Of a stretch of 64,000 nucleotides of DNA, positions 9,385 through 30,462 are shown piece by piece. This DNA comes from Octopus sinensis (taxonomy: Eukaryota): positions 558,001 through 622,000 of the forward strand of contig NC_043004.1 in the NCBI RefSeq assembly GCF_006345805.1, given 5' to 3'. The notes beneath the pieces are model-generated. The model did not search any database and was not told the DNA's origin. It saw only the letters and a program-made list of their open reading frames with translations. Positions within the stretch are counted from its first letter, which is position 1. Each line of letters starts with the position of its first letter. A program made the translations under genes and the position numbers.

Positions 9385-9790
9385 GAGAGGATGGGTGTGA
9401 GGAAGGTCATTTTCCCATGTGACCTTCCTCACTGGAACATTGTAAGCCAGCAGCTATTACAGCTTCAGTTCTATTGCCAAAGTTCTGGTGCTACACCTCA
9501 AGGGTTAGCCCAGCTCCACCAGCAGATTTTCCTGCAGATCAGAAGCAAAGGTCCACCGACCCCATTCACCTACCATGAAGGCACCAGCAGTAGTCAACCC
9601 AAGGAGCTGTCTACAGCTGAAAGTCAACCATGTGTTTATCAAGGCCTTGTGATTTTCCTGGAACAAGTTGCTAGCATCGATGAAAAGGACTGCTTCCTGC
9701 ACTTCATCTTCCCTGCCGTTATCGATATGGCCTGTAATATCAAGGAATTAATTCCACAGGAAGGTATACCTCTCTGTCGGAAGCAGTGCA
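9385..9790 (+). CDS. PARG-like: PARG-like coding exon 1 (probable ATG at 9391)
   Basis: ttttcag acceptor, then ERMGVRKVIFPCDLPHW...IFPAVIDMACNIKELIPQEGIPLCRKQC, then donor gtaagt at 9791 (phase 1). The acceptor implies an upstream exon that was not identified with confidence. Confidence 0.85.
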
Positions 9791-12484
9791 GTAAGTTGCT
9801 ATTCACTTATCTTTAACCAGGTGTTTCTTTCTTTTTTTTTTTTGTTTTAGGAAACATTGGGCCCAGACGTGATTGTGTCGTTAAGAGGTTTGCTTCCCAA
9901 CCATTTAATTCTGAGTTTAGTCCTGTGGACAAGTGCTTTCTACTATATATTTCTTTACTACCCACAAGGGGATAAAGTCGATTACATCGACCCCAGTGCG
10001 AAACTGGTACTTTATTTATCGACCCGAAAGGATGAAAGGCAAAGTCAACCTTGGTGGAATTTGAACTCAGAATGTAAAACAGACGAAATACCTATTTCTT
10101 TACTACCCACAAGGTGCTAAACACTGAGGGGACAAACAAGGACAGACAAACGGATTATGTCGATTATATCGACCTGAGTGCGTAACTAATTTATTTATCG
10201 ACCTCGAAAGGATGAAAGGCAAAGTTGACCTCGGCGGAATTTGAACTCAGAACATAACGGCAGACGAAATACCGCTAAGCATTTCGCCTGGCGTGCTAAC
10301 AATTCTGCCAGATCACCGCCTAATTAACAACCAACAACAATAGTAATTAATTAATTAAGAAACACAAAAAGCCTTGTGAAATCAGCTAGCCAGGGTTTCC
10401 TGGCTGGAATGTTGAATTGTTTTTTTGCTACTGTTCAAACTGGCAAAGTCAACAAAGCAGTTTAGTAAACTGTTTGGTGTAATCAAAGTTTGAATAAGCA
10501 CACGGCTTGAAAAAAGACAGAAACCAATCAAAGGGAGATAATTAAGTGTGCAGGAAATGCTGACATTCTTTTACAAGTGTTGAAAGTTCCAGAAACCAAC
10601 ATTGGAATTGGTTACCTTTAATTCTTGTGGTTTGTCTTTAATTCTTGCTAAGATGTACTTTGCAGAATGTGGACATGATGAAAACATCTCAGTGTTTGGT
10701 ATTCATATAGTCCCTGGAGGTTCTTAGGTTCTTTAAAAGATTGTTTTTGAAGCAAGCATATGGAACGTCTTTAACACAAGGTCTTGTAAAGGATCTTCCA
10801 TTTGATGTAGCTGATGGTCAGATCTTTAAGTCTCTAGATTAATACTGAAAGGGTTGATGTATGTCCCCTTGGGTTGCCTAAAGCTAGAAAGATGGATGTT
10901 GTGTTTAATTTGTGTGTGTGTTTGTGCCTTCTTGCATTGACATGACATTGCATGATAGTTGTAAATGAGTGCCACTGTCATACAAGCGGTGTCCTTCATT
11001 TTCAATCTGCTATGGAAAACCTGTTTGGCTATGGGGAAATATTACCATAGGAACCAGCGTCGCCTTACTGGCACTCGAGCCATGTGCTACTAGGGTATTA
11101 AGAGCACCATCCGAGCATGATCGTTGCCAGAGTGGCTATTTGGCCTCCGTGCCAGTGGCACGTAAAAGACACCATTCGAGCGTGATCGTTACCAGCATCG
11201 CCTTACAGGCACCTGTGCCGGTGGCATGTGTAAAAGATTCGAGCAAGGTCGTTGCCAGTACCACCTGACTGGCCCCCGTGCAGGTGGGACGTAAAAGCAC
11301 CCACTACACTCTCGGAGTGGTTGGCGTTAGGAAGGGCATCCAGCTGTAGAAACTCTGCCAGATCAAGATTGAAGCTTGGTGCAGTCATCTGGTTCGCCAG
11401 CCCTCAGTCATTCGTCCAACCCATGCTAGCATGGAAAGCGGACTTTAAATGACGATGATGATGATGATGAAACAGGTGAGTGTCAGTGACAAGAAGAGTG
11501 TCCAACCGTAGAAAAATCTGCCTCCACAGATTCTGTCTGACCCAAGCAAACCTGGAAAAGTGGACGTTAAATGACAACGATGATGATTGATAATGTAGTT
11601 TTAGATACTCTGTGTCTGAATAGAAGTTGGCATGATTGTAGCTGAAACATCTTTAATCATAAGTCTGCTTGAATTAAGGTTGACCTGCAGTTAAAAGCAA
11701 CAACTCATGTTTATTGATGCATTGAAGCACACATAAAACCGATTAGGTTCATGCAAACACACACACACACACACACACATGCAGACACACACACACACAT
11801 GCAGACACACACACACGCACACACACACACATTTGTACCTCTCCATTTGTACCTCTCAGAGAAGTAATTATTGATTATCTTTTATATTTCCGCAGCCAAA
11901 AGCATTGCAGTCAGCCGTAACTTAATGTCAGCCATCATTTCATGTGCATTTCTGTGCCTGTTTCCAGAGAGGAAGAAAGAGAAAACATCGCGGCTAAATA
12001 ATATTAATTTCTCTAATTTCTTTCGCTACCTTCCTCTGTAAGTAGCTAGAATTACCATATATTTTCTTCTTCTTCTTTAGTGTTCCTTCATATACACTCA
12101 TCCATTCATTGGAGAAAACACAGCAGCCACATATGAACATAGATATATATGTAAATGTAGGCGCAGGCATGGCTGTGTGGTATGAAGCTTCATTCCCAAC
12201 CACATGGTTCCAGGTTCAGTCCCACTGTTGGCCCCTTGGGTAAGTGTCTTCTACTATAGCCTGGAGCCGGTCAAAGCTTTGTTAGTGGATTTGGTAGAAT
12301 ATCAGCAATATTGAGGAATATGTTGTCATGAAACGCGTGTAGTAAAGTATATAATTTGGAATAAGAATTGAAGGTATTAATTTTGATTATTTTAATACTT
12401 AGTCCTATATGTATCTATTGTGGATAATGTCATTCAATGATGATTGGAATTGCTTGAGGGTAATTCTGTCTCTTAAACCTATCT

Positions 12485-15500: not shown

Positions 15501-15929
15501 TATTTATATTTTAAGTCTGGTTCTTATTCTATTTGTTGTCTTTTGGTGAACCACTAAGTTACAGGGGTGTAAAGAAACCAACACTGGTTGTCAAGTGGTG
15601 GTGGGGGACAAACACAACACAAGCACACACACATACATAGACACATACATATATTCATTTGTATTTGTGCGTATCTATCTGTCTGTCTGTCTAGCTATCT
15701 CTCTGTCTATCTATCTATCTGTCTATCTCTGTGTCTGTCTATCTCTCTCTGTGTCTATCTGTGTCTGTCTGTCTCTCTATGTCTATCTATCTGTCTATCT
15801 ATCTGTCTATTTATCTATCTGTCTTGCTATCTCTTTGTCTATCTCTCTCTATGTCTATCTCTCTCTGTGTCTATCTCTCTCTCTCAGTGTCTGTCTACCT
15901 CTCTCTGTCTATCTGTCTGTCTGTCTGTC

Positions 15930-15968
<39 letters not shown>

Positions 15969-18900
15969 CTCTGTCTGTCTCTCTCTGTCTCTCTCTCTCT
16001 CTCTCTCTGTCTGTTTGTCTCTCTCTGTATTTTTTAGAATAATAGATAAGGAAAACAGAGTAGACGGGTAAGCTTTATTTAGTTTGCAGCACATTCTGTC
16101 TTCCCTATCAATTACAACATACTAAATGTGCACCGAAGAATTCCTTACCTAAATCCTGCGGATGACACTTGGCAGCCGTAAGTGGTAAACGTACTCTCAA
16201 GGCACACTCCCCGGGACATACCCAAAACAAAGTTGGGATATAACATTTTAAAATCTCCTATCTAAATTTTAATTTAAACAGGTGCAGGAGTGGCTGTGTG
16301 GTAGCTTGCTTTCCAACCACATAGTTCCGGGTTCAGTCCCACTGCATGGCACCTTGGGCCGACCAAAGCCTTGTGAGTGGATTTGGTAGACGGAAATTGA
16401 AAGAAACCCGTCGTATATATAGATATGTATATGTATTTGCATGTATGTGTTTGTGTGTCTGTGTTTGTCCCACTAACATCCCTTGACAACTGATGCTGAT
16501 GTGTTTATGTCCCTGTAACTTAGTAGTTCAGCAAAAAGAGACCGGTAGAATAAGTACTAGGCTTACAAAGACTAAGTCCTGGGGGTCGATTTGCTCGACT
16601 AATGGTGGTGCTCCAGCATGGCCACAGTCAAATGACTGAAACAAGTAAAAGAATAAAAGAATATATATACACACACACACTCACATGAACATACATGTAT
16701 CAGGTTGTTCATGAATACTACTCATAACATGTAGCAACCAAACCATGTGACATGTCTGCTGCCCAACAACCTAACTACATTCTTTTGTGAAGATGGCACA
16801 AAACTCAACATGCATGATTAAACTCTAACAATTAGTACTTTAATCAAATTTAATGAACGAAAATCCTTCATACCATTTCCCCGCCATAACCTACCATACA
16901 GTATAATTACCATTCAACAGAACTCTAGTTACCATTGAAAATTTTAAACTTAACCAGGGACTATATAACATCAAAAGCCCAATGATGGCTCAGCTGACCA
17001 CAACTTCAAAGTCACTGTCAAAACTATTCTTCTTGTTAAAGATTAATAAACATTATATATATATATATACTTCATTAAAAAGTAGTACAAATATCACAAA
17101 AACTGTTACTCAGAGTTTCACGTTCTCTTTTGTCAACAGTTTTGTTCTAAACAAAACTTTCTGACGAATAGGAACGTGAAACTCTGAGTAACAGTTTCTG
17201 TGGTATTTTTGCTGCTTTTTAATAAAGCATATTATTCTACCTTTGGTATTTGAGTACTATTTTTTTTGCCACCTTGTTCCACATTTATGTGCTTAGAGCG
17301 CCTACTTCTGCTGGTGACAAAGGGCATCTCGCTCAGAGTAAAAGTTAGACTGTATGATGCATGTGTACAAACTGCCATGCTACATGGCAGTGAAACATGG
17401 GCCGTAACTGCTGAGGACATGCATAAGCTTGCAAGGAATGAAGCCAGTATGCTCTGCTGGATGTCTAATGTGAGTGTGCATACATGACAGAGTTTAAGCA
17501 CCCTGAGAGAAAAGTTGGATTTAAGAAGCATCAGATATGGTGTGCAAGAGAGACGACTGCTGGTATGGTCATGTGTTGTGAATGAATGAGGACAGCTGTG
17601 TGAAAAAGTGTCACGCTCTAGCAGTTGAGGGAATCTGTGGAAGAGGTAGACCCAGGAAAACTTGGGATGAGGTGGTGAAGCACGACCTTCAAACATTGGG
17701 CCTTACCGAGGCAATGACTTGTGACCGGGACCTTTGGAGATATGCTGTGCTTGAGAAGACCTGACAATCCAAGTGAGACCATAGCCCATGGCCTATGCCA
17801 GTGGGTGTAACCAGCCCATTTATGAATATCCCTCATTCATTGGACAATAAACCTTGATTGTGAAGACCTATTGAGGCAAGTGAAATCAAAATTGCTGACG
17901 TGACCAAAGACAGTACCGCCTGATTGGTACACATCCGAATGTGGGGTGTAACCGGGCCACTTATGAGTATCCTTCATTCATTGGACAATGAACTTTGCTT
18001 GCAAAGACCTGTTGAGACAAGTGTAAACAAACCAAAATCGCTGATGTGGCTGATGACAGTACTACCTGATTGGTACTCATGCCAGTGGAACGTTAAAAGC
18101 ACATCCATGTGTGATCGCTGCCAGGGCCACGAATTGGCTCCCGTACTGGTGACATGGGAAAAGCACCATTCAAGCATGATCGTTACCAGTGTCAGCTTAC
18201 CAGCACATGTGCCAGTGGTACATGTAAATATAAGTAGAAAAAAAAAGAAAGTATTTTTGTATTCTTTAATGAAGGAGAAATCTCGTTCGTCTCTCAACCG
18301 CATAACCAATATTTTTAACCAAACTGTTCAATGTCTTTTCGTTTTATGTCGATTTTTTTTTTTTTGTCTTTAAAAAATTGTTTTTTGTTCTTTTTTTAAA
18401 ATCTCCAGGAGGAAATTATTTATATGACCTGTCCTGAATTGCTGGCCTCTACTCTCTTCATGGAAGCTATGGACGACAATGAAGCCATAACCATTAAAGG
18501 CTTTGAGAAGTTCTCTGAGTTTTCTGGTTATGGAGAGAATTTGAAGTTCTCTGGAAACTACTGTGATAAGGCTTCTGTGAGTAACTCTGAATGCTGCATA
18601 TTTTCCTTAAATAGTCAGAATGTTTGGCGGTGCTTTGTTATCACCTATGGCAACAAGGAATACATTTAACTTTCATTGTTGTCGTCATTATCATTGTTAT
18701 CACCACCACCACCATCATCATCATCATTTAATGTCCATTTTCCCTGCTGGTGTTGGGGTTGAACAGTTTGACAGGAGCTGGTATGGTCAGGGGCCATACC
18801 AGGTTCAATAGTCTGTTTGGGCTTGGTTTCTATGGCTTGATGCCTTTCCTAATGCCAACCACTACTGGTTGGGTGCTTTTTATGTGGTACCAGCACCAGT

Positions 18901-21900
18901 ACTTTTATGTGGCACTAGTGCCTTTTACATGACACCAGCACAGGTGCTTTTTGTGTGGCATCAGCCCTGGTGCTTTTATGTGGCACAAGTGCTTTTTATG
19001 TGACACCAGTACTTTTTATGTGGTACCAGTGTTTTTTATATGGCACCAGCGCCCTCACCAATGCTTTTTTTGTGGTATCTTGGTTTTAGGACCTCTATTA
19101 TGTTGTGGTGGCAGGTCTTCTCGAGTACAGCACTGCACCACATATTTCCGTCCTCTGTCATCTCCTTTGTAAGGTTCAGCATTTTGAGATTGGCCTTCTG
19201 TACTTTGTTCCATGTCTTCCTGGGTTTCCTTCTTCTATAACTTCTTTCCACTTTAAGTGATCATCTCTTCTTTATGCCACTGTCCTCATCCATCTGCATC
19301 ACAAGACCAAACTGGTGCCGTCTCCTCTCTTGCACACTGCCTGTAATTCCTCTTATGCCCAACTTCTCTCAATATGCCAATGCTCTGTCGCACATGGACA
19401 CAATGGATTTTTATACGTAAAAAGCACCATTCGAGCGTGGTCGATGCCAGTCCCTCCGGACTGGCTCCCATGCTGGTGGCATATGAAATACACCATATGA
19501 ATGTGGTTGATGCCAGTGCTGCCTGACTGGCTCCTGTGTTGGTGGCACAAAAAGCACCATTCGAGCATGGTTGTTGCCAGTGTCACCTGACTGGCCTCCG
19601 TGCCAGTGGCATGTAAAAAGCACCATTCAAGCGTGGTCAATGCCAGTACGCACACACACACACACACACACCACTATATCATCATCATCATCATTTAACA
19701 TCTGTGTTCCATGCTGGCATGGGTTGGACTGTTTGATGGTATTTGATGGGCCCAAGGACTGCATTGTGCTCCACTGTCTACTTAGGCATGGTTTCTATTG
19801 CAGGATGCCCATCCTAACGCCAACCATTTTACAGCATTGTACTGTGGAGATACATTCATTTTCTCTTAGAAGTGAACTGTTGTTTATTTGCTTTGCATTT
19901 AAATGTTTATATTTTTGTTTTCTTTTCCTCCAGCGGAAATCTGATGGCAATCTGGAGACAATGCTAAGTGCCATCAATACACTTCCGTACAAGTTTAACA
20001 ATCAACAAAAGCAATACATGGACCGATACCTGTTGCGAGATCTCAATAAATGTCTGGTTGGCTTTCAGCCAGCAATAAGCTCACTAAATCACACATCTGC
20101 AGATGAGGATTCCTTTCTCAATCAGGTTTGTGTCAACTCTGAGACACAAACTGTTACTACTGGAATTGTAGAAGACCCCATTCTTGTAACTAACGTTGAA
20201 CCCAGCAGTCTAACGCCTCCCCATAAAAGCAATGTTGCATCTAACACAGATGAGATTCTCATTGCCAATGAAGCAACAGATGTTGAAGGTTGGTTTTTGT
20301 GTTTTTTTGTTTATTTGTTAAAATATAAGCAATAATAAATCTTAGAGCAAGTTATAAACTGTAGCTGCAACACAACGTGAAGTATATTTGCCATTTAAAT
20401 ATGGCTAACCCCTAAGGGTGGATGCTACTGTAGCTTGTAACCTCAGGAGGACACCTCCTCCAGCTGGCTATTGACACACTTTCTGTGCCCAAGTGTGTCA
20501 ATAGCCAGCTGGAGGAGGTGTTCTCCTGGGGCTACAAGCTACAGTAGCATCCACCCTTAGGGGTTAGCCATATTTAAATGGCAAATATACTTCATGTTGT
20601 TAAAATATAGTTTACTTAGTAATTGATCTGGATGAGTAATTGTCAAATACCTGTATGTTGTTATTTGTTCCTTCTCAAGCCATGCTTGGCTCATAAGGGC
20701 TGGTTTCCCCGTTTCATTGGCATATATGTTCCCCACCTAGGCAGGATGCCGGTCTGTCGCAGGTGAGCTTCAAGATGCGGGAGGAAAGAGTGAGAGAAAG
20801 TTGTGGCGAAAGAGTCAGCAGAAGATCACTCTTACCTTCTGCTGGAGCCACGTGGATCTTAGGTGTTTTGCTCGTAAACACACACATCACCCAGTCTGAG
20901 ATTCGAACCCAGAGTCCTTTGACCGTGAGTCAACTGCTCTAACCACTATGCTGTGTGTCCACTAAATACCTGTGTGGGAACATTATATCCAACATGTTTT
21001 TGATATGTCATTTGTGTGTTGTTTTATATGTCTTTCTCTTTTTCAGCTCTGAACATAGACACACATACACCACATATTTACATCTTATTTCGAAATGATT
21101 TCCATTCATATTGATTTCTGTTAATTTTAAAAATGTTTATATTTGTAGGGGAAAGAAAAGAAGTGAAATTTGTCGAAGATATTGATAGTTTTGCCAAGCG
21201 TTTAACAAAAGAAATTCTCACCGAATCTCTATGTGAATTGAACCCTCAGTGTACTTGTAATAACTCTGATGATGTGGCTCCTCGTTTTGATAAAGAATTC
21301 AAGTCTATAGCAAAGTTTATACCAGAACATTGTTCCCTGTATGGCAGCGGGCTGTTGGCGTCTACCTTTGGTCATACAGCATCGATGGATTACTTGGATG
21401 TTGATTACCATGACTGGATCTCAAACTTTCGACGTCGAAGTTCAAACCTGAGTGATTTGACATCCCGTCGAAGTAGCTGCAGTACACGTTACAGCTCCTA
21501 CAGCGACATCAGTTCAGACTTTGAGGAATTGTACGAATCTTTCATGAAACGAGAACTCACGACTCGTCCTGGTACGATTCATGAAGAAATCGGCACATAC
21601 AATGTTCAGGATTTTGCTGCCAATTTTATAGAAAACCTACTCCAAGAGAGTGCTGCTATTGTTTATAATACAACCGGTATGCAGAACTTCCAAAATATTC
21701 ACCTTCCATCTAATCTGCACAAACCTGTGCCAATTAAACTTGGCCCTGAACCAAACATCGATCGTAATGCCAATGTCTCTTTTATATCAGAGGACACTGT
21801 CCAAGGTTATGTGGATCATTTATTTGAAGACATCAAGGTGACTGTTGTTGATTCAGAAGAAATTTGTTTACAGTGTGAAAATAAAGAACAACAAAGACAA

Positions 21901-24900
21901 TGTTCATTTTTCAGCAATTTAAGCACACTGAATGATCTTTCTGATGCTAGCATCATGTCTGTTGAGCCAGCTTGTAACATTTTCCGGCCAGCCATACCAC
22001 AGGCCATCTACAGTTATTCAGATTACCTCTCAAATGAAATTTTATGTGATTCTCTAAACGAAATAAGTACTCTAAATATTTCCTTTCTTGTCAGTTCGGT
22101 TTTAGCATCCAACAGTGAACAGAAAACCTCTCCATCGTCTACAGAGCTAGACTTAACTGCAGTTGCAGATAAATTAGTCAACCAAATCTTTCGGGAAGCC
22201 AAAGCTATAGTTAACTGCACTAACCCTTCCTCAGCTTCTTCCAGTCGACGACAATCACTATGGAGCAACTCTTCTTCATTGTCTGGTTGGATGAATAATA
22301 GCTTATCGTTTGGATGTTGGATTAATGATTTAAGTTCAAACATTCTCGACAGCAGCCTGAAAACAGCTCACAAAATTAGTATGTTTATTGATAGTATTGA
22401 ATGCCATGGTGTAAAAGCTGCCTATACCTCAAGTAGTTGCCAAGGAGTTTATCTCCCTGATTACGACAAATATGCCTTGACTATTACGAAGGAACTATTT
22501 ACAAATGCTTTGTTAGAACTGCACGAAAACTACCTTATTAACCCCTATTACCGACAGCTGCTACGGTACCAATATGGGCCCAGCTTGCAGAATATGACTA
22601 GTGTTGAAGACATGGACTGTTGTGGAGTTGGTTTTGACCACAAACTTGTTCCTCAGGAAGATCTTGCCAATTTCTATATGGAACTTGAGAGGCAAAGTTC
22701 TTTGAGTGAGCAGAATAAAACAATTGAACCAAGCATGAGTGGATTCCGCGATATTACACTTTCACAGTTTGCCGAGGAACTGATGCGCGCTGATGCAACG
22801 AGCCAGTCTTTGTTGAGCTTGCGCAATAATTGGCACCAGGAAAGTTTCCACAGCGGTAGTCTGAGTGGATTTAAAGACAACACTTTGGCAAGTTTTGAGG
22901 ACGAGTTGCTTAGGAGTCGTGTTGATTCTCCAGATTCCTTACTATATTTTGATATTAGGGACAATTTCCAACATCAAGAATCAGTGATCTCTCGAACTGA
23001 TATTTCCGATGACCCGACATCTAAAGATTTCAGTGAAATCCATTCTATGTCTTTGGACAGTGACGATAATCTATCAACATTTGCTGATCAGGTGTCAGAG
23101 GAAATAATGTACGAGTCTTTTGTAGATATTTTTGGAGTCATTCCATGTAACGTTCAGTTTAAATCTAATATATGCTTGCTATGTCTTGAAATGATTGCCG
23201 ATGAAATTGCCAAAAATGTGATCCATGTTGCCATTCTGACGTTGCAAAACCCTTCTTGCGACTACAGCGAAGATTTAACTCTGAACTTTTCACAATTTAC
23301 TCATCCATGCTTGCATAGAAAATTTCCTGTAATGTCTGTCATCGATTCCGAACCACAAAACATTCCACCACCTCTAACTCTAAATGACTTTTATGAAAAT
23401 ACTTCCAAAGAAATCATAGAATCTGCTATTTTAACCGTTTCTTCATGCAGAGACATTTACAAAGTAAGTCGAAATATTTTTTTTTAAATTATTTTTCTCT
23501 TTATTCTGTAATCCTTTCTTTTTCCACTGGTGAAGCAAAAACATAAACTCCTACGAGTGAAATGAATTAACTTCACTTTTGTATTTGTTCTGCAAGGTTC
23601 TTGATGTGAATTCATGAGTTGAAATAAATCTTGTCTTGGGAGGGTCATCATACTAATAACAACAGCACATGCACTGGTGCACTACCACTTCTTTATTGCT
23701 TGTCAGTTGGTTGAATATTTACCCAACTAAGTAATTGATCATTTGTTTAATGTGCTGATTAAACAGGTGATCAGGTGTTTGTTAGTCAAAGTCCTTTTGT
23801 TTCTTTATTGCCCACAGGGGCTACACACAGAGGGGACAAACAAGGACAGACAAACAGATTAAGTCGATTATATTGACCCCAGTGTGTAACTGGTACTTAT
23901 TTAATCAACTCCGAAAGGATGAAAGGCAAAATCAACCTCAGTGGAGTTTGAACTCAGTTGGTTAAATATTGGGTAAATATTTAACAATCTGACAAACAAT
24001 AAAGAAGTGATATTGCACCAGTGCGTGTGCTGTTGTTATTGGTGTGATGGCCCTCCCAAGACACAAAAGAGAGGAAGTCACTGACCTTCTCAGTGGCTTC
24101 CTCTATCCGCAAGGTCTACTCTGATGAATTTAGTTTTTCGTTTTACTGGAGAAAAACAGCAAAACATCAACAATAAACTGAAGGATGAATCATTGGGTGA
24201 ATTTTGTCAAAATGGTGTTTTCTTGGTTAGTTGAAACAAATATTGGTTTCAGATTTTGTCTCAAGGCCAGCAGTTTTGGTGGGGGGGGGTAGGAAAATCG
24301 ATTACACCAACCCCATTGTATGACCAGTACTTATTTTATTGACCTCTGAAAAGGGTGAAAGGCAGAGTCAACTTTGGTGGAATTGGAACTCAGAACGTAA
24401 AGACAGATGACATGCCACTAAGTGTTTGGCTCAATATGCTACCGATTCTGTCAGTTTGTTGTCTTTGCATGTTTTTTTTACCAAAATCTTAACGTCTGCC
24501 TACTTCTCTCTCTTACTGCTGTAAATCATTGGTCTATTGCCATACTGGGGCACTGCCCTCAAGTATTTTAATTGACTGTGTAGATAGTTGTATTGCTTTT
24601 AGCTTTAGTTATTATTTATTACTCTCATAAGAAATGAAGGGCAATTTGAGGCTACGGTAAGAGAGACTTGCTCAAGGTGCCCTACAATGAGATCAAGCTT
24701 GGAAGTAAATATTAAATATTCTTTTCTACTCTAGGCACAAGGCCCGAAATTTGGGGGGAGTTGGCCAGTTGATTAGGTTGATCCCCAGTACGCAACTGGT
24801 ACTTAATTTATTGACTCTGAAAGGATGAAAAGCAAAGTCGACCTTGGTGGAATTTGAACTCAGAATGTAAAGACAGACGAAATACCTCTAGGTATTTCAT

Positions 24901-26083: not shown

Positions 26084-29000
26084 TGCTCTTGCAATGGTTT
26101 TTATCATTGAATGAATATTCATTACATATAGCACACATATCAAACATTTTTTTAATTAAATTTTTTGTTCATGATGATGACAACGACCATCATCATCATC
26201 ATCACCGTCATCATCATTTAACATCTGTTTTCTATGCTGGTATGGGTTGGATGGTTTGACAGGATCCATCAAGCTGCAAAGCTGCATTGGGTGTCAGTCT
26301 CAGCTTTGGCAGGCTTTCCATAGCTGGATACCCTTCCTAACACTTGCCCTTCCTAATGCCATCTAGAATATCAAATATCCCCTTTCTAATGCCATCCAGA
26401 ATGTTAAATCACTGTAAGACATCCAAAATATTGTTGGTGGCAGGCTGAAATTCACCTGCCTCAAATCAACAGCACAGCACAGCACAGGTAAATTCATACA
26501 GCTTATACAAAATCCATGTACAAGGCTTTGGTCAGCCTGGGGCTATAGCACAAGACAGTTGCAGTGGGACTGGAACCAAAAGCCTGTGATAGGTAAGCAA
26601 ACTTCTTACCGTACAGCCATGCCTGTGCCTTAATGTTCTTCTTTTTTTAGGCACCAAGTCCAGAATATCGGACATAGGTGACCATGTCCTGCCACAATTC
26701 TCTGTTCTTTGTTCCCTATAACAGTTCCATTTCTTCCTGATGTTTAATGCCTCTTCCCTCCAACCAATTCTCCAAGTTTGCCATCCATATCCTCCTTCTT
26801 CCTCTGATTCTTTCCCCTTTAGTCTCTCCGGTCATCCCTAAATTCTCTAGGCCCTCTTTCCTCATCATGTGACCAAGAAATCTCAGTTACTTGGCCCTCA
26901 TCTCACAAAGTTTCCTATTTATCACAGCCTGGGTCATCACTTCGTTAGACCCTTTTATATGTCCAGGCTATCCTCAAAATTTTCCTTAAGAACCACATTT
27001 CATATCTCTCCAAGCACCTTCTCATTTCTAATGTTACAAACCATGCCTCACTTCCATATATCAACACAAGGTAGACATAGCACTCCAATGTATGGATCTT
27101 GGTCCTGCTTCTCAAAATGTTATACAATTTTGAGAATGCAGATTTTTACCAGCACCATTTGTCTTGATCTCGTTCACACATCTTATGTCTTCTGAGATCA
27201 AAGTTCCAAAATAGTTAAAGGATGATCCCTGCTTCATAATATTCTAATAAAATGAAACTTTACCAAGAACCTTAACATCTTCATCATACCTTTCTTTACA
27301 GAAATATTTCTCGCTTGAATTTACTATCTTTTACCCTCAAATTCAACTCCTATTTATTCACATTGTTTTGAGTTAATCCTGCATTATACAGTTCTGTATT
27401 TAAGAGATGAGAAATTATGTACATTATTTACATTATTTACCTTGTTTACATTTGATGGATATTTGTCCTCATCTTGTTTGTTGTTAACACAACGTTTCGG
27501 CTGATATACCCTCCAGCCTTCATCAGGTGTCTTGGGGAAATTTTGAAACTGGGTTCTTATTCCTAAGGTATTTTTCAATGTTGTCGTTGTTATTATTATT
27601 ATTATTATTATTATTAAGGTCACTGCCTGGAATCGAACTTGGAATCTTGGGTTTACTAGCCAGACCACTACGGCATATGCCTGTGGGCATCTGGCGTAGT
27701 GGTGACCTGAATGATAATAATAATAATAATAATAATAATAACATCAACAACATCGAAAAATACCTTAGGAATGAGAACCCAGGTTTGAAATTTCCTCAAG
27801 ACACCTGATGAAGGCTGGAGAGTATATCAGCCAAAACGTTGTGTTAACAACAAATAAGATGAGGACAAATATCCATCAAATGTAAATAATGTAATCTTGC
27901 ATTATCTCAGCAACAAGATTTTGATGATCTGTATGTTTGTCTTTAGAATGAAATTGTAGGGTAGGTGTGAGAGGCAGGATCTAATCAGTTTGAACGAAAA
28001 ACATGAATATTTGGGCCAGACATGGTCGGTTTAAATACTGAAAGGGTTAACCTTTCTTCCTTCTTGATTTGCAGAGTAATTGTCGAGCGTTAGTCAGTTC
28101 ATGTGGAATCCCTGGATCAAATCCCCAGCTTGAAGTTTTGCTCCAGTGGATTGTTGCTTCATACATCCAAACTCCAGTTTTTATATGTTACACAAAGCAA
28201 AGTGAAAAACTTGTCAGGGTGAGTAAAGAACACTCGTTTATTCTGTAATGCTTCTTTTTTTTTATAATCTTTGGTGGGCGTGGCCGTTGCCAGTACCACC
28301 AAACTGGCCCTCGTGCCGGTGGCACGTAAAAGCACCCACTACATTCTTGGAGTGGTTGGCATTAGGAAGGGCATCCAGCTGTAGAAACTCTGCCAGATCA
28401 GATTGAAGTCTGGTTCGCCAGACCTCAGTTGAATCGTCCAACCCATGCTAGCATGGAAAGCAGACGTTAAATGATGATGATGATGATGATGTTACATGAT
28501 CATGAGCAGACTATTGGATGTTGTTATACATCGCTGATCACTGTGCACTTTGCATTGTTTTAGCTTTTGAATGATGTCACTGCATTGGCTAGGTGAGCAG
28601 GCTAACACCTTCCCCTGATCAGGAGGCTAGTCCATTGCGGGTGTGACCCATTTACAGCTGAATGGATTGGAGCAATGCTAAATGAAGCATTTTGCTCAAG
28701 AACACAACACATTGCCCAGTCCAGGAATTGAACTCGGCATGTAAAAAGCATCATCCAAACGTGGCCGATGCCAGTACCCACTGACTGGCTCCTGTGCCAG
28801 TGACACATAAAAAGCACTATCCGAATGTGATCAATGCTAGGCCTACCTGACTGGCTCCTGTGCCAGTGGCATGTAAAATCCTCTCTCCAAATGTGATCAA
28901 TGCCAGGGCCGCCTGACTGGCTCCTGTGCTGGTGGCAAGTAAAATGTACCCACTACACTCTTAGAGTGGTTGGTGTTAGGAAGGGCATCCAGCTGTAGAA

Positions 29001-29821: not shown

Positions 29822-30462
29822 GACAGGCTTCTTTCAGTTTCCCTCTACCAAATCCACTCACAAGGCTTTGGTTGGCCTGAGGCTGTAGTAGAAGACACTT
29901 GCCCAAGGTGCCACACAGTGGGACTGAACCCGGAACCATGTGGCTGGTAAGCAAGCTACTTACCACACAGCCACTCCTGCGCCTCTGTTTGCATATTATT
30001 TATAATTTCCCAGTTTCTGTAAGAAAACGATATTCTCTGTCTCAATGTTGTTTCTCTTTCATGTTTCAGTTTCCCGATGTGGTCAGCATTGTCCAAGCAA
30101 AGTGCTGGACTGTTGGTGATCTGATGTGTACTGTACATAAGTTCTGTAACCAGGCTCTTGAGCAGTTGGACTCTGAAGGAATAATTACATTAGATTTATT
30201 CGAAGAAGTCCTCATATCTGCCCATCGTTGTCGTCCTGTTCTTGAAATGTCTCCAGATGACGCCACTGTTATTGCTGAAGTGCCTACAAGCGATTCCACT
30301 GTTGTCAACCTGCCACTTGAATATGTCACCTCTAGCAACAACAACAACAATGATGATGATAATGGTAATGTTGTTCCGGCTGTATCCGAAAATGACCAAA
30401 TCCTTCCTACCACTCTCCTCCCTTCTGAGAGTGATACAGTAATTGATGACGATCCTGACTGA
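9391..30462 (+). CDS. PARG-like: PARG-family (poly(ADP-ribose) glycohydrolase-like) gene, 10 coding exons, ~1397 aa, with ~845-aa insertion in the catalytic domain
   Basis: Exons 9385/9391-9790, 11896-12037, 12987-13086, 13794-13913, 15229-15285, 18409-18576, 19934-20288, 21149-23463, 28075-28218, 30070-30462. All have AG/GT ends with matching phases; total 4194 nt = 1398 codons. Motifs occur in canonical PARG order: IFPAVIDMAC..IPLC, ISCAFLCLFP..INF, KLRCILHYFRRV, FANRFLGG..Q/EE, PELL..NEAI..GFEKFSEFSGY, RDLNK..GF, LLQWIVAS, WTVGDL. Confidence 0.9.
9940..10320 (-). mobile_element. tRNA-head SINE family C, representative copy (also 14740-14980, 24950-25310, 52408-52620)
   Basis: Minus strand reads ggcgagctggcagaa.cgttagcacgcc..gagttcaaattccgccgaggtc..ctggggtcgat. 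Confidence 0.8.
11896..12037 (+). CDS. PARG-like: PARG-like exon 2
   Basis: TKSIAVSRNLMSAIISCAFLCLFPERKKEKTSRLNNINFSNFFRYLP; resembles canonical [22 protein letters not shown]..INF. Phase 1 to 2. Absent from the ORF track. Confidence 0.9.
12987..13086 (+). CDS. PARG-like: PARG-like exon 3
   Basis: QSQCAKLRCILHYFRRVASAGQYFTGEIEIQRQ (canonical EKLKTLFCYFRRV..G.VTFTRQ). Phase 2 to 0. Confidence 0.9.
13794..13913 (+). CDS. PARG-like: PARG-like exon 4
   Basis: VMEPRKRPTLETWKNCSTSLCPIYVRENGKTYDASSATLK; tag acceptor, aag|gttggt donor. Phase 0 to 0. Confidence 0.85.
14397..14442 (-). ncRNA. hammerhead ribozyme motif of the same family
   Basis: GGCAC CUGAUGA AGGCUG..CAGAC GAAAC GUU GUGUU; one mismatch in stem II. 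Confidence 0.65.
15229..15285 (+). CDS. PARG-like: PARG-like exon 5 (first half of catalytic loop)
   Basis: IGFANRFLGGHILSKGRCQ (canonical VDFANRFVGGGVTSAGLVQ); ttcag / cag|gtagg. Confidence 0.9.
15670..16030. repeat. compound (CTAT)n/(CTGT)n microsatellite; numerous (AT)n, (CA)n and (GAT)n tracts elsewhere
   Basis: Seen directly; it generates the spurious LSVYLSIC-type ORFs. Confidence 0.95.
16276..16660 (+). mobile_element. tRNA-head SINE family A, representative copy of many (e.g. 505-905 -, 3030-3535 +, 29560-29985 -, 59180-59535 -)
   Basis: caggagtggctgtgtggta..ggttcagtcccactgc head, microsatellite core, ...gactgaaacaagtaaaaga tail. Confidence 0.85.
17295..17850 (+). mobile_element. 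3' fragment of an RTE-type LINE
   Basis: RLYDACVQTAMLHGSETW...GRGRPRKTWDEVVKHDLQTLGL..DRDLWR, followed by 3' UTR. Confidence 0.85.
18409..18576 (+). CDS. PARG-like: PARG-like exon 6 (catalytic EE and Tyr-clasp region)
   Basis: EEIIYMTCPELLASTLFMEAMDDNEAITIKGFEKFSEFSGYGENLKFSGNYCDKAS; ccag / gtgagt. Confidence 0.92.
19115..19400 (-). mobile_element. 3' fragment of an RTE-type LINE
   Basis: RRRKPRKTWNKVQKANLKMLNLTKEM, homologous to 17582-17764. Confidence 0.7.
19934..20288 (+). CDS. PARG-like: PARG-like exon 7 (AINTL..RDLNK..GF, then start of the insertion)
   Basis: RKSDGNLETMLSAINTLPYKFNNQQKQYMDRYLLRDLNKCLVGF followed by an acidic linker; donor g|gttggt (phase 1). Confidence 0.88.
20372..20600. 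repeat. near-perfect fold-back palindrome, ~110-bp arms, 9-nt loop
   Basis: Arms 20372-20481 and 20491-20600 are reverse complements; same family as the termini at 36550-36941. Confidence 0.9.
21149..23463 (+). CDS. PARG-like: PARG-like exon 8: 2315-nt exon encoding a Ser/Asp-rich insertion with repeated amphipathic helices
   Basis: Lies within the 784-aa open frame 21133-23487. The tgtag acceptor matches the phase 1 of exon 7 and the aaa|gtaagt donor matches the phase 0 of exon 9. Confidence 0.88.
26650..27260 (-). mobile_element. decayed RTE-type LINE fragment
   Basis: KIHTLECYVYLVLIYGSEAW..EMWFLRKILRIAWT. Confidence 0.7.
27486..27531 (-). ncRNA. minimal type I hammerhead ribozyme motif (Penelope-type), intact core
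   Basis: GACAC CUGAUGA A GGCUG-loop-CAGCC GAAAC GUU GUGUU; stems I and II pair; stem III is the palindrome ACGU. Confidence 0.75.
27800..27845 (+). ncRNA. hammerhead copy with core mutation GAAA>AAAA (probably inactive)
   Basis: GACAC CUGAUGA AGGCUG..CAGCC AAAAC GUU GUGUU. Confidence 0.6.
28075..28218 (+). CDS. PARG-like: PARG-like exon 9 (degenerate GCGAFGG loop)
   Basis: SNCRALVSSCGIPGSNPQLEVLLQWIVASYIQTPVFICYTKQSEKLVR (canonical [25 protein letters not shown]..YFT); gcag / gtgagt. Absent from the ORF track. Confidence 0.85.
30070..30462 (+). CDS. PARG-like: PARG-like terminal coding exon
   Basis: FPDVVSIVQAKCWTVGDLMCTVHKF (canonical LTVGDVYKLL), an acidic tail, then TGA at 30460-30462. 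Confidence 0.88.
   Translation, partial: FPDVVSIVQAKCWTVGDLMCTVHKFCNQALEQLDSEGIITLDLFEEVLISAHRCRPVLEMSPDDATVIAEVPTSDSTVVNLPLEYVTSSNNNNNDDDNGNVVPAVSENDQILPTTLLPSESDTVIDDDPD

What the first reader, a model, noticed from the sequence alone, without database searches (positions are those of the whole stretch)
21181..23430. PARG fused to an array of AKAP-like (PKA RI-type) docking helices: candidate ADP-ribose/cAMP signalling scaffold
The insertion between RDLNK..GF and the last catalytic loop contains nine spaced 17-mers with one pattern: IDSFAKRLTKEILTESL (21181), VQDFAANFIENLLQESA (21604), IYSYSDYLSNEILCDSL (22006), LTAVADKLVNQIFREAK (22153), FGCWINDLSSNILDSSL (22309), YDKYALTITKELFTNAL (22462), LSTFADQVSEEIMYESF (23071), LEMIADEIAKNVIHVAI (23185) and LNDFYENTSKEIIESAI (23380). 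Hydrophobics at 1, 4-5, 8-9, 12-13 and 16-17 match the RI-anchoring peptide RIAD (LEQYANQLADQIIKEAT) and the repeated helices of AKAP11/SPHKAP-type proteins, here set in Ser/Asp-rich linker. I know of no described PARG-AKAP fusion; novelty and binding are inference.
Basis: partly seen in the sequence, partly recalled or inferred. Interest (0 to 1): 0.92.

Follow-up and report, generated by a model that had tools for sequence, protein, structure and literature searches.

The report
Octopus PARG carrying AKAP-type docking helices
An octopus gene for a poly(ADP-ribose)-trimming enzyme has a 771-residue floppy loop carrying nine kinase-docking-type helices; it appears to be the still-whole invertebrate form of the vertebrate AKAP11/SPHKAP anchoring proteins, which would show where that psychiatric-risk gene family came from.

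Summary
All nine 17-mers sit at the stated coordinates inside one 2,315-nt exon (21149-23463). That exon splices in frame into a 10-exon PARG gene. My hand-built 1,397-aa model is 100% identical to RefSeq XP_029639794.1 (Octopus sinensis, "uncharacterized").

The exon encodes a disordered insert between RDLNKCLVGF and the diphosphate-binding loop of the macro domain. The same split-PARG architecture occurs in bivalves, gastropods, a brachiopod, a nemertean, an annelid, echinoderms and amphioxus.

Six of the nine helices are conserved in position across these phyla, and linkers are not. A profile of the conserved helices finds one clear hit in the whole PDB: the RI-binding helix of smAKAP (5HVZ, E=0.0013). 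The helices carry the published RI determinant, [F/Y]A at positions 1-2.

Profile-profile alignment shows the family is collinear with vertebrate SPHKAP along its whole length. The C-terminal match is strong (E=6e-20). The N-terminal (E=4.4e-5) and insert (E=0.0012 to 0.011) matches are weaker.

The gene is therefore most likely the invertebrate counterpart of the PARG-derived AKAP11/SPHKAP family, not an unprecedented fusion. In Octopus the catalytic loops have decayed, so PAR hydrolysis is doubtful. PKA binding is untested.

The parts
9391..9790 (+). PARG gene exon 1 with the start codon (MGVRKVIFPC...). It encodes the start of the PARG helical domain.
   Evidence: tblastn to ortholog P0001; splice model; model identical to XP_029639794.1
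11896..15285 (+). Exons 2-5 (11896-12037, 12987-13086, 13794-13913, 15229-15285). They encode the rest of PARG_cat_N and the start of the macro domain, including FANRFLGGHILSKGRCQ (GGG signature changed to GGH).
   Evidence: all sites AG/GT and in frame
18409..18576 (+). Exon 6: EEIIYMTCPELL...SGYGENL. The catalytic Glu-Glu of the QEE motif is retained.
   Evidence: Pfam PARG_cat_C 5e-15 on this exon alone
19934..20288 (+). Exon 7: ...YLLRDLNKCLVGF (20036-20065), the last helix of the N-terminal half of the macro domain, then the start of the insert. The insert start includes a degenerate remnant (SNTDEILIANEATD, 20240-20281) of the phospho-FFAT motif that orthologs and SPHKAP carry here. An internal phase-0 donor at 20125 could in principle skip the giant exon.
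21149..23463 (+). Giant exon 8 (2,315 nt; residues 448-1219 of the model). It is a disordered insert carrying all nine helices.
   Evidence: no Pfam, PDB-sequence or fold match as a whole
21181..21231 (+). Helix 1, IDSFAKRLTKEILTESL (FA dipeptide). Conserved in position in 14 orthologs.
   Evidence: best HMM hit, 13.7 bits; pLDDT 73-77
21412..21543 (+). The most conserved block of the insert: DWISNFRRRSSNLSDLTSRRSSCSTRYSS..SSDFEELYESF. It holds two PKA-consensus RRxS sites followed by an acidic-aromatic FFAT-like stretch (EFEEYYDNF in orthologs).
   Evidence: (top two conserved windows)
21604..21654 (+). Helix 2, VQDFAANFIENLLQESA. [FY]A is present in 14 of 15 family members. It aligns with high confidence to the invariant SPHKAP helix GxYATNLAESVLQDAFIRLSQ.
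   Evidence: AF2 pLDDT 81-90
22006..22359 (+). Helices 3-5 (22006-22056 IYSYSDYLSNEILCDSL; 22153-22203 LTAVADKLVNQIFREAK; 22309-22359 FGCWINDLSSNILDSSL). They lie in the poorly alignable middle of the insert. Helix 3 shares 8 of 14 residues with the smAKAP helix YAHRLSQDILCDAL.
   Evidence: low occupancy; found by the leave-octopus-out HMM
22462..22512 (+). Helix 6, YDKYALTITKELFTNAL (YA dipeptide). Corresponds to the strongly conserved ...SLSRDLLTNAF[IL]EVQ of orthologs.
22738..22914 (+). Duplicated short motif SGFRDITLSQFAEELMR (22738-22788) and SGFKDNTLASFEDELLR (22864-22914). The first copy aligns to the SPHKAP helix FANEVAAKIMN.
23071..23430 (+). Helices 7-9 (23071-23121 LSTFADQVSEEIMYESF; 23185-23235 LEMIADEIAKNVIHVAI; 23380-23430 LNDFYENTSKEIIESAI). 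All three are conserved in position from molluscs to amphioxus. Helix 8 aligns to the RIAD-like SPHKAP helix HVEQYANRLAADIVE.
28075..28218 (+). [quoted passage not shown] The diphosphate-binding loop has decayed to SSCGIPGSNP (28096-28125), followed by QLEVLLQWIVASY...
   Evidence: hhalign to the SPHKAP C-terminus 99.2%, E=6e-20
30070..30462 (+). Exon 10: the end of the macro domain (FPDVVSIVQAKCWTVGDLM...), an acidic/Asn-rich tail, and the stop codon TGA at 30460.

Best explanation
Window 9391-30462 (+) is the Octopus sinensis gene LOC115214898. It encodes a PARG-family protein whose macro domain is interrupted by a 771-residue intrinsically disordered insert. The insert sits between the helix ending RDLNKCLVGF and the diphosphate-binding loop, and almost all of it is encoded by one exon (21149-23463).

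The protein belongs to a bilaterian-wide family of 'split PARGs'. These are the invertebrate counterparts of vertebrate SPHKAP/AKAP11, and through them of AKAP3/AKAP4.

Shown: the exon is in frame and part of the mRNA. The insert has no globular fold. It carries nine amphipathic helices of one motif ([FY]-A-x-x-h-h-x-x-h-h-x-x-[AS]-h-x-x-h), six of them conserved in position across phyla. The family is collinear with SPHKAP.

Inferred mechanism: each helix is a docking site for the dimerisation/docking (D/D) domain of a PKA regulatory-subunit dimer, most likely RI-type. The folded macro domain then holds both ends of a multivalent string that can gather several PKA holoenzymes, as SPHKAP and AKAP11 do with RI. 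The conserved RRxS sites next to the helices would be substrates of the anchored kinase.

In most orthologs the PARG catalytic signatures and the FFAT/phospho-FFAT (VAP-binding) motifs are intact. Those proteins may therefore combine PAR/ADP-ribose hydrolysis or binding, ER tethering and PKA anchoring. In Octopus the diphosphate loop, one Gly of the GGG motif and both FFAT motifs have decayed. The octopus protein is thus probably a scaffold with a pseudo-enzyme or reader-like macro domain, a drift parallel to that of the vertebrate AKAPs.
For: Gene structure. All splice sites are AG/GT and in phase. The model is identical to RefSeq XP_029639794.1. An intron-free 4,385-nt contig from another mollusc carries one ORF with PARG + insert + PARG.

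PARG identity. Pfam gives PARG_cat_N 1e-22 and split PARG_cat_C 4e-45. With the insert removed, the core aligns end to end with human PARG structures at E=6e-39.

Family. 1,882 profile hits. Named orthologs with the same split occur in Pinctada, Mizuhopecten, Mya, Haliotis, Patella, Lottia, Lymnaea, Biomphalaria, Lingula, Tubulanus, Owenia, Acanthaster, Diadema and Branchiostoma.

Helix conservation. Helices H1, H2, H6, H7, H8 and H9 have occupancy 0.95-1.0 in 14 orthologs and are among the best-conserved 17-residue windows. Helix positions score above linker positions (Mann-Whitney p=3e-5).

AKAP likeness.
- The 24-position helix profile searched against 177,635 PDB sequences gives the smAKAP RI-binding peptide 5HVZ_C as the sole clear hit (E=0.0013; the next hit is 0.21).
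- [FY]A occupies positions 1-2 in 14/15 (H2), 10/15 (H8), 9/15 (H9) and 8/15 (H7) family members. Hydrophobic residues fall at 1,2,5,6,9,10,13,14,17. This is the RI-type consensus of PMC12083921.
- There are weak Pfam SmAKAP hits on ortholog helices. Genuine SPHKAPs show the same pattern.

SPHKAP homology. hhalign gives 98% over the whole length, with collinear high-confidence blocks: the N-terminal half of the macro domain, LRELNKAxVGF ~ IIFEINKFLIGL, the phospho-FFAT motif, H2, the LSxFAEELM motif, H8 and the C-terminal half. Piecewise results are C-terminus E=6e-20, N-terminus E=4.4e-5, insert E=0.0012 and phospho-FFAT E=0.011.

Literature. The C-termini of AKAP11, SPHKAP, AKAP3 and AKAP4 are half a PARG macro domain (PMC11377751). 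SPHKAP has a phospho-FFAT motif (F212/T214) and two RI-anchoring helices, and it forms RI clusters that RIAD disperses (PMC10460453).

Disorder. AF2 gives pTM 0.25 with isolated helices, and there is no fold match.
Against:
- None of the nine octopus helices, scanned as 29-mers, hits Pfam RII_binding_1 or SmAKAP, whereas the Ht31 control does.
- Only four of the nine octopus helices have a strict [FY]A. H3-H5 are not conserved outside cephalopods.
- Insert-only homology to SPHKAP is weak taken piece by piece (hhalign probability 19% or less). The SPHKAP helix aligned to H2 lies in the N-terminal 819 residues, which did not cluster with RI in PMC10460453. Not every helix of this motif is therefore an RI anchor.
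- In the AF2 model of alligator SPHKAP, four such helices are predicted with pLDDT 82-90 and may pack into a bundle. Some helices could be structural.
- Amphipathic helices of this register also bind other D/D-type proteins.
- The ADP-ribose arm is weakened in Octopus.
Confidence: 0.6

Rival explanations
1. The helices are docking sites for other proteins with a four-helix D/D-type module, such as ROPN1/ropporin, SPA17, CABYR or DPY30-like proteins, or for some unrelated partner. On this reading the protein is a scaffold, but not a PKA scaffold, in octopus.
For: No octopus helix reaches any Pfam AKAP model. Strict FA/YA is present in only 4 of 9 helices.
Against: The best and only clear PDB match is an RI-bound AKAP helix. 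The homologous vertebrate proteins SPHKAP and AKAP11 are experimentally established RI anchors (PMC10460453, PMC12083921). The FA/YA determinant is conserved at H2, H7, H8 and H9 across phyla.
Confidence: 0.2
2. The helices are structural or self-associating elements, for example an intramolecular bundle, packing onto the macro domain, membrane-binding amphipathic helices, or condensate 'stickers'. Their resemblance to AKAP helices would then reflect only shared amphipathicity.
For: AF2 predicts a run of four well-scored helices (pLDDT 82-90) in the homologous middle of alligator SPHKAP. In real proteins amphipathic helices are far commoner than in shuffled sequence, so the shuffle test overstates specificity.
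Against: The octopus insert model has pTM 0.25 and no fold match. Natural helical PARG domains give only 0.42 motif hits per 771 aa against 9 here. The sequence-specific [FY]A start and the [AS]-h end are conserved, which goes beyond simple hydrophobic periodicity.
Confidence: 0.13
3. Annotation or assembly artefact: the giant open frame is a separate nested gene or a non-coding coincidence inside a PARG intron.
For: None found beyond the unusual size of the exon. No RNA reads were available for this window.
Against: A 784-codon open frame in AT-rich DNA, with phase-matched consensus splice sites on both sides. An identical RefSeq model. A single uninterrupted ORF on an intron-free contig in another mollusc. 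The same architecture in 14 or more species from 7 phyla.
Confidence: 0.02

Closest known systems
SPHKAP (SKIP) and its paralog AKAP11 (AKAP220): vertebrate multi-helix, RI-anchoring AKAPs of the 'AKAP 110' family
   Same: The two are collinear along the whole protein by profile-profile alignment. The N-terminal segment is RQVL..WL..LCPI / NEAIxIxG / LRELNKAxVGF in the split PARGs and ACKKVL..YWL..LCRIG / NEIVLLSG / IIFEINKFLIGL in SPHKAP. A phospho-FFAT motif ([DE][FY]xTA[SF]E) follows directly. Next comes a long disordered region with several [FY]A-type amphipathic helices (H2 ~ GEYATNLAESVLQD; H8 ~ HVEQYANRLAADIVE). The C-terminal half of a PARG macro domain follows (E=6e-20). Genuine SPHKAPs give the same weak Pfam pattern: AKAP_110 on only the last ~90 residues, plus sub-threshold SmAKAP hits.
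   Different: The octopus protein and its invertebrate orthologs still have the complete PARG helical and macro domains at Pfam significance, and most keep GGG-x-QEE and GNWGCGAF. SPHKAP and AKAP11 have no recognisable catalytic residues, and only their C-terminal half had been recognised as PARG-like (PMC11377751). Octopus lacks the FFAT motifs. PKA binding is proven for the vertebrate proteins and untested here. AKAP11 itself was not retrieved; its relation rests on the literature.
Canonical PARG (e.g. human PARG catalytic domain, PDB 4B1G/4A0D)
   Same: The PARG helical domain and macro fold are present. The catalytic Glu-Glu is retained. With the insert removed, the core aligns end to end with solved PARGs (E about 6e-39 to 8e-42).
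   Different: The loop between ...NKAxxGF and GNWGCGAFGGD is 14-111 residues in short-loop PARGs and about 850 residues here. In Octopus the diphosphate-binding loop is SSCGIPGSNP and GGG has become GGH.
smAKAP RI-binding helix (PDB 5HVZ chain C) and the RIAD peptide
   Same: Same register and key residues. The family consensus ledfAdsLakdilqeAfl compares with smAKAP ILEYAHRLSQDILCDALQ. Octopus H3 YSDYLSNEILCDSL shares 8 of 14 residues with it. The RIAD core QYANQLADQII (confirmed in the literature) resembles SPHKAP EQYANRLAADIV and octopus H8.
   Different: smAKAP is a 97-residue, membrane-anchored, vertebrate-only protein with one helix. The similarity is helix-level, probably convergent or motif-level, and does not indicate family membership.
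AKAP3 / AKAP4 (sperm fibrous-sheath AKAPs; Pfam AKAP_110, PF05716)
   Same: Their C-terminal LQAVLQW[IV]AAS...LLDWL segment is the same PARG-derived piece. Lingula and one other homolog hit AKAP_110 positions 607-669 at E about 1e-3.
   Different: The octopus protein does not reach the AKAP_110 threshold. The central 600 positions of that model match nothing in the invertebrate proteins.

Membership tests
PARG (poly(ADP-ribose) glycohydrolase) | PARG helical domain plus PARG macro domain (Pfam PF20811 + PF05028) | tested here: met
   PARG_cat_N 1.2e-22; PARG_cat_C 4.1e-45 in two stretches. Solved PARGs match at E=6e-39 to 8e-42.
PARG (poly(ADP-ribose) glycohydrolase) | Catalytic signature GGG-X6-8-QEE | tested here: inconclusive
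   Octopus has GGHILSKGRCQEE: the Glu-Glu is kept and the third Gly is replaced by His. 15 of 40 family sequences have the intact signature.
PARG (poly(ADP-ribose) glycohydrolase) | Diphosphate-binding loop GNWGCGAFGGD | tested here: not met
   Octopus has SSCGIPGSNP at 28096-28125, and O. bimaculoides has the same. The loop is intact in Pinctada, Mizuhopecten, Haliotis, Patella, Lingula, Tubulanus, Acanthaster, Diadema and Branchiostoma.
PARG (poly(ADP-ribose) glycohydrolase) | Hydrolysis of poly(ADP-ribose) | not testable with these tools
   Needs an enzyme assay.
A-kinase anchoring proteins (functional class) | Direct binding of a 14-18-residue amphipathic helix to the D/D domain of a PKA regulatory-subunit dimer | not testable with these tools
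A-kinase anchoring proteins (functional class) | Amphipathic helix with hydrophobic positions 1/2, 5/6, 9/10, 13/14, 17 | tested here: met
   The position-wise hydrophobic fraction is 0.7-1.0 at those positions in six conserved helices across 15 species. All nine are predicted as helices by AF2.
A-kinase anchoring proteins (functional class) | RI-type determinant: F/Y-A at helix positions 1-2 (PMC12083921) | tested here: met
   In Octopus H1 FA, H2 FA, H6 YA and H7 FA meet it; H3 YS, H4 VA, H5 WI, H8 IA and H9 FY do not. Across orthologs: H2 14/15, H8 10/15, H9 9/15, H7 8/15.
A-kinase anchoring proteins (functional class) | Match to a curated AKAP helix model (Pfam RII_binding_1 PF10522 / SmAKAP PF15127) | tested here: not met
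   None of the nine octopus 29-mers hits, while Ht31 hits at 6.8e-7. Orthologs give only sub-threshold hits: SmAKAP 2.5e-4 to 0.77, and RII_binding_1 0.014 in Patella. In the reverse direction the family helix profile hits smAKAP 5HVZ_C at E=0.0013.
AKAP 110 family (SPHKAP, AKAP11, AKAP3, AKAP4) | C-terminal PARG-derived segment (...LQWxAAS...LFDWLL) | tested here: met
   hhalign of the invertebrate C-terminus against the SPHKAP C-terminus: 99.2%, E=6.1e-20; 98% in the tool run.
AKAP 110 family (SPHKAP, AKAP11, AKAP3, AKAP4) | Pfam AKAP_110 (PF05716) above the gathering score | tested here: not met
   No hit for the octopus protein. The best invertebrate hit is 18.7 bits against a cut-off of 25 (Lingula). 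Real SPHKAPs score only 23-78 bits, and one scored nothing.
AKAP 110 family (SPHKAP, AKAP11, AKAP3, AKAP4) | Collinear N-terminal domain, phospho-FFAT motif and internal helices shared with SPHKAP | tested here: inconclusive
   N-terminus 69% probability, E=4.4e-5; phospho-FFAT E=0.011; insert E=0.0012. Block confidences are high within the full-length alignment. Foldseek on an AF2 model of SPHKAP matched PARG only over ~84 columns, the length of the confidently modelled C-terminal segment; the output does not state which residues aligned. In Octopus the phospho-FFAT motif is degenerate.

The most novel reading that the evidence does not exclude
Most invertebrate bilaterians (molluscs, brachiopods, nemerteans, echinoderms, amphioxus) possess a bifunctional enzyme-scaffold. 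It is a catalytically competent PARG whose macro domain is split by a disordered arm. The arm carries FFAT/phospho-FFAT (VAP/ER-tethering) motifs, PKA-consensus sites and six or more RI-type A-kinase-anchoring helices. This would physically couple poly/mono-ADP-ribose turnover to anchored cAMP/PKA signalling at ER contact sites. The vertebrate AKAP11/SPHKAP/AKAP3/AKAP4 family would be its pseudo-enzyme descendants. They would retain both halves of the macro domain, not only the C-terminal half. RI-selective anchoring would then predate vertebrates, contrary to the current timeline.
Probability: 0.35. Interest if true: 0.88.

Novelty: new variant of a known kind. Interest (0 to 1): 0.74.

Why it matters
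AKAP11 is one of the strongest shared risk genes for bipolar disorder and schizophrenia. SPHKAP organises type I PKA at ER-plasma-membrane and ER-mitochondria contacts. Their origin is obscure. The latest evolutionary survey (PMC12083921) dates SKIP, AKAP220 and RI-selective anchoring to the base of vertebrates. The only link to PARG (PMC11377751) is a remote C-terminal half-domain, with the N-terminal half said to have been lost.

The octopus gene and its orthologs look like the missing whole form: a full PARG with the AKAP arm inserted in one loop.

If this is right, four things follow.
- It dates this AKAP family, and probably FA-type RI anchoring, to the bilaterian ancestor.
- It predicts that the N-terminal ~185 residues of SPHKAP (and, as its paralog, probably AKAP11) are the other half of a macro domain. 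That gives these disease proteins a testable ADP-ribose-reader hypothesis.
- It offers natural enzyme-plus-scaffold versions (Haliotis, Lingula, Branchiostoma and others) in which cross-talk between ADP-ribosylation and PKA can be tested directly.
- It shows pseudo-enzyme drift occurring independently in cephalopods and vertebrates.

The protein itself is already in RefSeq and UniProt, but only as 'uncharacterized' or automatically named PARG.

Tried and rejected
- **Pfam and PDB sequence search on the 784-aa frame** gave no hits.
- **Pfam AKAP helix models on the nine 29-mers** gave nothing, although the Ht31 control worked. I therefore reversed the test and searched the PDB with a family helix profile.
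- **The word-indexed homolog search** found only 4 relatives. The exhaustive profile search was needed.
- **Pfam AKAP_110 on full-length invertebrate proteins** gave only sub-threshold C-terminal hits. I first read this as evidence against an AKAP-110 relationship. I dropped that reading once genuine SPHKAPs behaved the same way.
- **'LQWxAAS' as a signature linking split PARGs to AKAP3/4** was rejected, because it is the general PARG consensus.
- **The 579-585-aa cluster members as insert-less isoforms** was rejected. They are genomic exon ORFs of the insert itself.
- **AF2 plus Foldseek to prove a complete macro fold in SPHKAP.** Only ~84 columns matched PARG, at non-significant E-values. 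The N-half claim therefore rests on hhalign alone.
- **NJ tree to decide whether split PARGs are paralogs of short-loop PARGs** was inconclusive, because the species of the short-loop representatives are unknown.
- **Literature search for the exact SPHKAP RI-helix sequences** found none in the held library.
- **Macrostomum P0070** turned out to be a tandem double PARG, not an insert.

Two searches used AKAP3/4 and SPHKAP sequences recalled from memory purely as bait. Only the database sequences they returned were analysed.

Full report
**1. What is in the sequence.**

The window is AT-rich animal DNA with short exons, retroelements and SINE-like arrays. They lie in one 784-codon open frame, 21133-23487.

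A tblastn with the closest full-length relative placed PARG exons on both sides of that frame. I built the gene by hand. It has ten exons, at 9391-9790, 11896-12037, 12987-13086, 13794-13913, 15229-15285, 18409-18576, 19934-20288, 21149-23463, 28075-28218 and 30070-30462. Every site is AG/GT and every phase matches, giving 1,397 residues. This model is 100% identical to XP_029639794.1, 'uncharacterized protein LOC115214898 [Octopus sinensis]'. It is 97% identical to the O. bimaculoides protein that UniProt auto-names poly(ADP-ribose) glycohydrolase.

Pfam finds PARG_cat_N (1e-22) and a PARG_cat_C split into two stretches (4e-45). With the insert removed, the core aligns end to end with solved human PARG catalytic domains (E=6e-39). 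The giant exon is therefore a genuine in-frame insert of about 771 residues. It lies between the helix ending RDLNKCLVGF and the strand leading to the diphosphate-binding loop.

**2. The pattern is not chance.**

A simple rule (hydrophobic at 1, 4-5, 8-9, 12-13, 16-17, polar elsewhere, no Pro/Gly) gives 9 sites against 1.7 +/- 1.2 in 2,000 shuffles. Shuffles are a lenient control, because real proteins are rich in amphipathic helices.

A stricter test used an HMM built only from the aligned helices of other species. The same HMM gives 0.04 hits per shuffled insert and 0.42 per 771 residues of ordinary PARG domains.

AlphaFold2, run with a 29-sequence alignment, predicts each of the nine as a helix. 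The model has mean pLDDT 52 and pTM 0.25 and no tertiary confidence. Foldseek finds no fold. The picture is helices on a disordered string.

**3. Relatives.**

The word-indexed search found four relatives. One is a 1,329-residue ORF on an intron-free 4,385-nt contig (SRR31729873). It reads PARG N-half, then an ~850-residue insert with the same helices, then ATGNWGCGAFRGD and the PARG C-half. This shows that the insert is part of a mature message in another mollusc.

An exhaustive profile search gave 1,882 hits, 34 of them below 1e-30. Source names place the split-PARG architecture in the following taxa:
- Bivalves: Pinctada, Mizuhopecten, Mya.
- Gastropods: Haliotis, Patella, Lottia, Lymnaea, Biomphalaria, Plakobranchus.
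- The brachiopod Lingula, the nemertean Tubulanus and the annelid Owenia.
- The echinoderms Acanthaster and Diadema, and the cephalochordate Branchiostoma.

Most of these keep GGG-x-QEE and GNWGCGAF. Octopus has GGH-x-QEE and SSCGIPGSNP.

**4.

I aligned 15 full-length family members with E-INS-i. Helices H1, H2, H6, H7, H8 and H9 have occupancy 0.95-1.0 and are among the best-conserved 17-residue windows of the insert. Helix positions score higher than linker positions (Mann-Whitney p=3e-5). H3-H5 fall in an unalignable stretch.

The most conserved elements of all are not among the nine. The first is DW..RRRSSNLSD..SRRSSCSTRYSS.FSSEFEEYYxNF, which holds two PKA-consensus RRxS sites and then an FFAT-like acidic-aromatic core. 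The second is a duplicated SGF[RK]DxTLSxF[AE]EEL motif.

Many orthologs also carry a phospho-FFAT-type motif ([DE][FY]xTA[SF]E) right after ...GF. Many carry a textbook FFAT (E[YF]xDALD[IV]P) between H8 and H9. Octopus has lost both.

**5. Are the helices AKAP-like?**

In the forward direction the answer is no. None of the nine octopus 29-mers hits Pfam RII_binding_1 or SmAKAP, whereas the Ht31 control hits RII_binding_1 at 6.8e-7.

In the reverse direction the answer is yes. A 24-position profile of 52 conserved helix copies was searched against all 177,635 distinct PDB sequences. It gives one clear hit, the smAKAP peptide crystallised on the RI-alpha D/D domain (5HVZ chain C, E=0.0013). The next hits start at E=0.21 and are mostly designed helical proteins.

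PMC12083921 defines RI-type anchoring helices by F/Y-A at positions 1-2 (97.7% conserved) and hydrophobic residues at 2, 5, 6, 9, 10, 13, 14 and 17. That paper also shows that removing the dipeptide abolishes RI binding by smAKAP. In the family alignment, [FY]A occurs in 14/15 (H2), 10/15 (H8), 9/15 (H9), 8/15 (H7), 7/15 (H6) and 4/15 (H1) members. The hydrophobic register is the published one. In Octopus itself H1, H2, H6 and H7 have FA or YA.

**6. Relation to known AKAPs.**

I retrieved real AKAP3/4 C-terminal exons and full-length SPHKAPs, using recalled sequences only as bait. I then ran profile-profile comparisons. The tool run gives 98% probability, E=2e-13, on the C-terminus.

A local hhalign run of the full-length profiles gives one collinear alignment of 981 columns. 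Its high-confidence blocks, in order, are:
1. RQVL...TLExWLxSxxxLCPIxV ~ ACKKVL...STxYWLxNxxxLCRIG.
2. MxDNEAIxIxGFE ~ PKENEIVLLSGL.
3. LLRELNKAxVGF ~ CIIFEINKFLIGLE.
4. sxEEFxTAxES ~ SSIEEDFLTASEHLEEE. This is the SPHKAP phospho-FFAT whose F212 and T214 are required for VAP binding (PMC10460453).
5. H2 ~ GEYATNLAESVLQD.
6. LSxFAEELM ~ VSTFANEVAAKIMN.
7. H8 ~ HVEQYANRLAADIVE.
8. The C-terminal half.

Tested piecewise, so that the strong C-terminus cannot carry the rest, the results are: C-terminus 99.2%, E=6e-20; N-terminal domains 69%, E=4.4e-5 over 149 columns; insert at best 19%, E=0.0012; phospho-FFAT block E=0.011. The invertebrate helix HMM also finds five to seven helices of the same motif in every SPHKAP examined.

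Genuine SPHKAPs hit Pfam AKAP_110 only over their last ~90 residues and give weak SmAKAP hits. This is the same pattern as the invertebrate proteins, so the missing central AKAP_110 match is not evidence against the relationship.

An AF2 model of alligator SPHKAP shows a beta-beta-beta-alpha-alpha-beta-beta-alpha N-terminal region of moderate confidence and a confident C-terminal helical piece. Foldseek ranks PARG structures first, but only over ~84 columns and at non-significant E-values. Homology of the SPHKAP N-terminus to the first half of the macro domain is therefore suggestive and not proven.

**7. Most likely function.**

The following points are shown. The protein is a PARG-family protein with a disordered, helix-studded arm. 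It is the cephalopod member of an old bilaterian family. That family is very probably the invertebrate counterpart of SPHKAP/AKAP11.

The following points are inferred. The helices dock the D/D domains of PKA regulatory-subunit dimers, most likely RI-type, so that one molecule gathers several holoenzymes. This would match SPHKAP and AKAP11, which form RI assemblies that RIAD disperses (PMC10460453). The conserved RRxS block would be a substrate in cis. In orthologs the FFAT motifs would tether the complex to VAP on the ER, and the intact macro domain could hydrolyse or read ADP-ribose. In Octopus the diphosphate loop, one signature glycine and both FFAT motifs have decayed. The PARG core also sits on the longest branch of the split-PARG group in the NJ tree. 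I therefore expect a scaffold with an inactive or reader-only macro domain.

I put 0.97 on the in-frame insert, about 0.85 on the SPHKAP/AKAP11 relationship, and about 0.55-0.6 on PKA-R binding by at least some helices.

**8. Caveats.**
- The SPHKAP helix aligned to H2 lies in the N-terminal 819 residues, which did not co-cluster with RI (PMC10460453). Motif membership does not guarantee anchoring.
- Some homologous helices may pack intramolecularly.
- Other D/D-type proteins use the same helix register.
- Whether these invertebrates also have a separate short-loop PARG is unresolved.
- AKAP11 itself was not retrieved. Its inclusion rests on the literature statement that it is SPHKAP's paralog.

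**9. Novelty.**

The protein is in public databases without functional annotation. A PARG-AKAP link is published for vertebrate C-termini.

Within the held library I found no description of three things: intact invertebrate PARGs carrying the AKAP arm, homology between the SPHKAP N-terminus and the first macro half, or pre-vertebrate RI-type helices in this family. Four literature searches returned only PMC11377751 for PARG together with these AKAPs. PMC12083921 explicitly dates SKIP, AKAP220 and RI-selective AKAPs to the vertebrate stem.

I rate it a new variant of a known kind, with high interest for the AKAP/PKA and ADP-ribosylation fields.

Noticed in passing
window 38397-42257 (- strand): Ty3/Gypsy-type LTR-retrotransposon pol region with RVT_1, RT_RNaseH and RT_RNaseH_2, Integrase_H2C2 and rve domains. 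It is spread over three overlapping or adjacent ORFs, so it is probably frameshifted and decayed.
   Followed up: partly
window 34577-35032 (- strand): Isolated reverse-transcriptase fragment (RVT_1, 8e-10), a remnant of another retroelement. The neighbouring ORF at 35295-35831 has no Pfam hit.
   Followed up: partly
window 2511, 4404, 8311, 13124, 18872, 19418, 28753, 46949, 49712, 53404, 62811: Short tandem arrays (2-4 copies) of one 62-71-bp SINE-like unit (...CCTGACTGGCTCCTGTGCCAGTGGCACGTAAAAAGCACC...) recur across the window in both orientations. Several lie inside PARG introns.
   Followed up: no
window 20117-20131 (exon 7) and 28075: An internal phase-0 donor, CAG|GTTTGT (the exon would end at 20125, after ...SFLNQ), is phase-compatible with exon 9. 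It could give an insert-less, canonical-length PARG isoform. No transcript evidence was available.
   Followed up: partly
window 28075-28218; O. vulgaris protein CAI9727037.1 (P0169): The O. vulgaris annotation (1,350 aa) is otherwise nearly identical but lacks the 48-residue exon 9, which holds the degenerate diphosphate loop. This is either an annotation gap or real exon skipping.
   Followed up: no
window 21412-21543 and orthologs: The best-conserved piece of the insert is not a helix. It is DW..RRRSSNLSD..SRRSSCSTRYSS.FSSEFEEYYxNF: two PKA-consensus sites followed by an FFAT-like EYYDNF core. SPHKAP has two similar SKQSS[CT]ESIT[DE]EF[SY]R[FY]M blocks at a different position.
   Followed up: partly
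orthologs P0001, P0022, P0028, P0029, P0033 (between helices 8 and 9) and just after ...GF: Mollusc and brachiopod orthologs carry a textbook FFAT motif (E[YF]xDALD[IV]P) and a phospho-FFAT motif ([DE][FY]xTA[SF]E). Octopus has lost both, in addition to its catalytic-loop decay.
   Followed up: partly
P0070 (Macrostomum lignano, 1,500 aa): This long 'PARG' is a head-to-tail duplication of two complete PARG domains and not an insert-bearing PARG. Length alone does not identify family members.
   Followed up: yes
P0029 (Lottia gigantea model), residues ~330-550: The gene model contains many tandem copies of a ~17-residue unit (RMPRVNSILYIVGRDEIC...) inside the macro domain. This is probably a mis-annotated intronic tandem repeat.
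   Followed up: no
window 15674-16028: A ~350-bp TCTG/TCTC-rich microsatellite in the intron between exons 5 and 6 produces spurious Leu/Ser/Cys-rich ORFs on the + strand.
   Followed up: no
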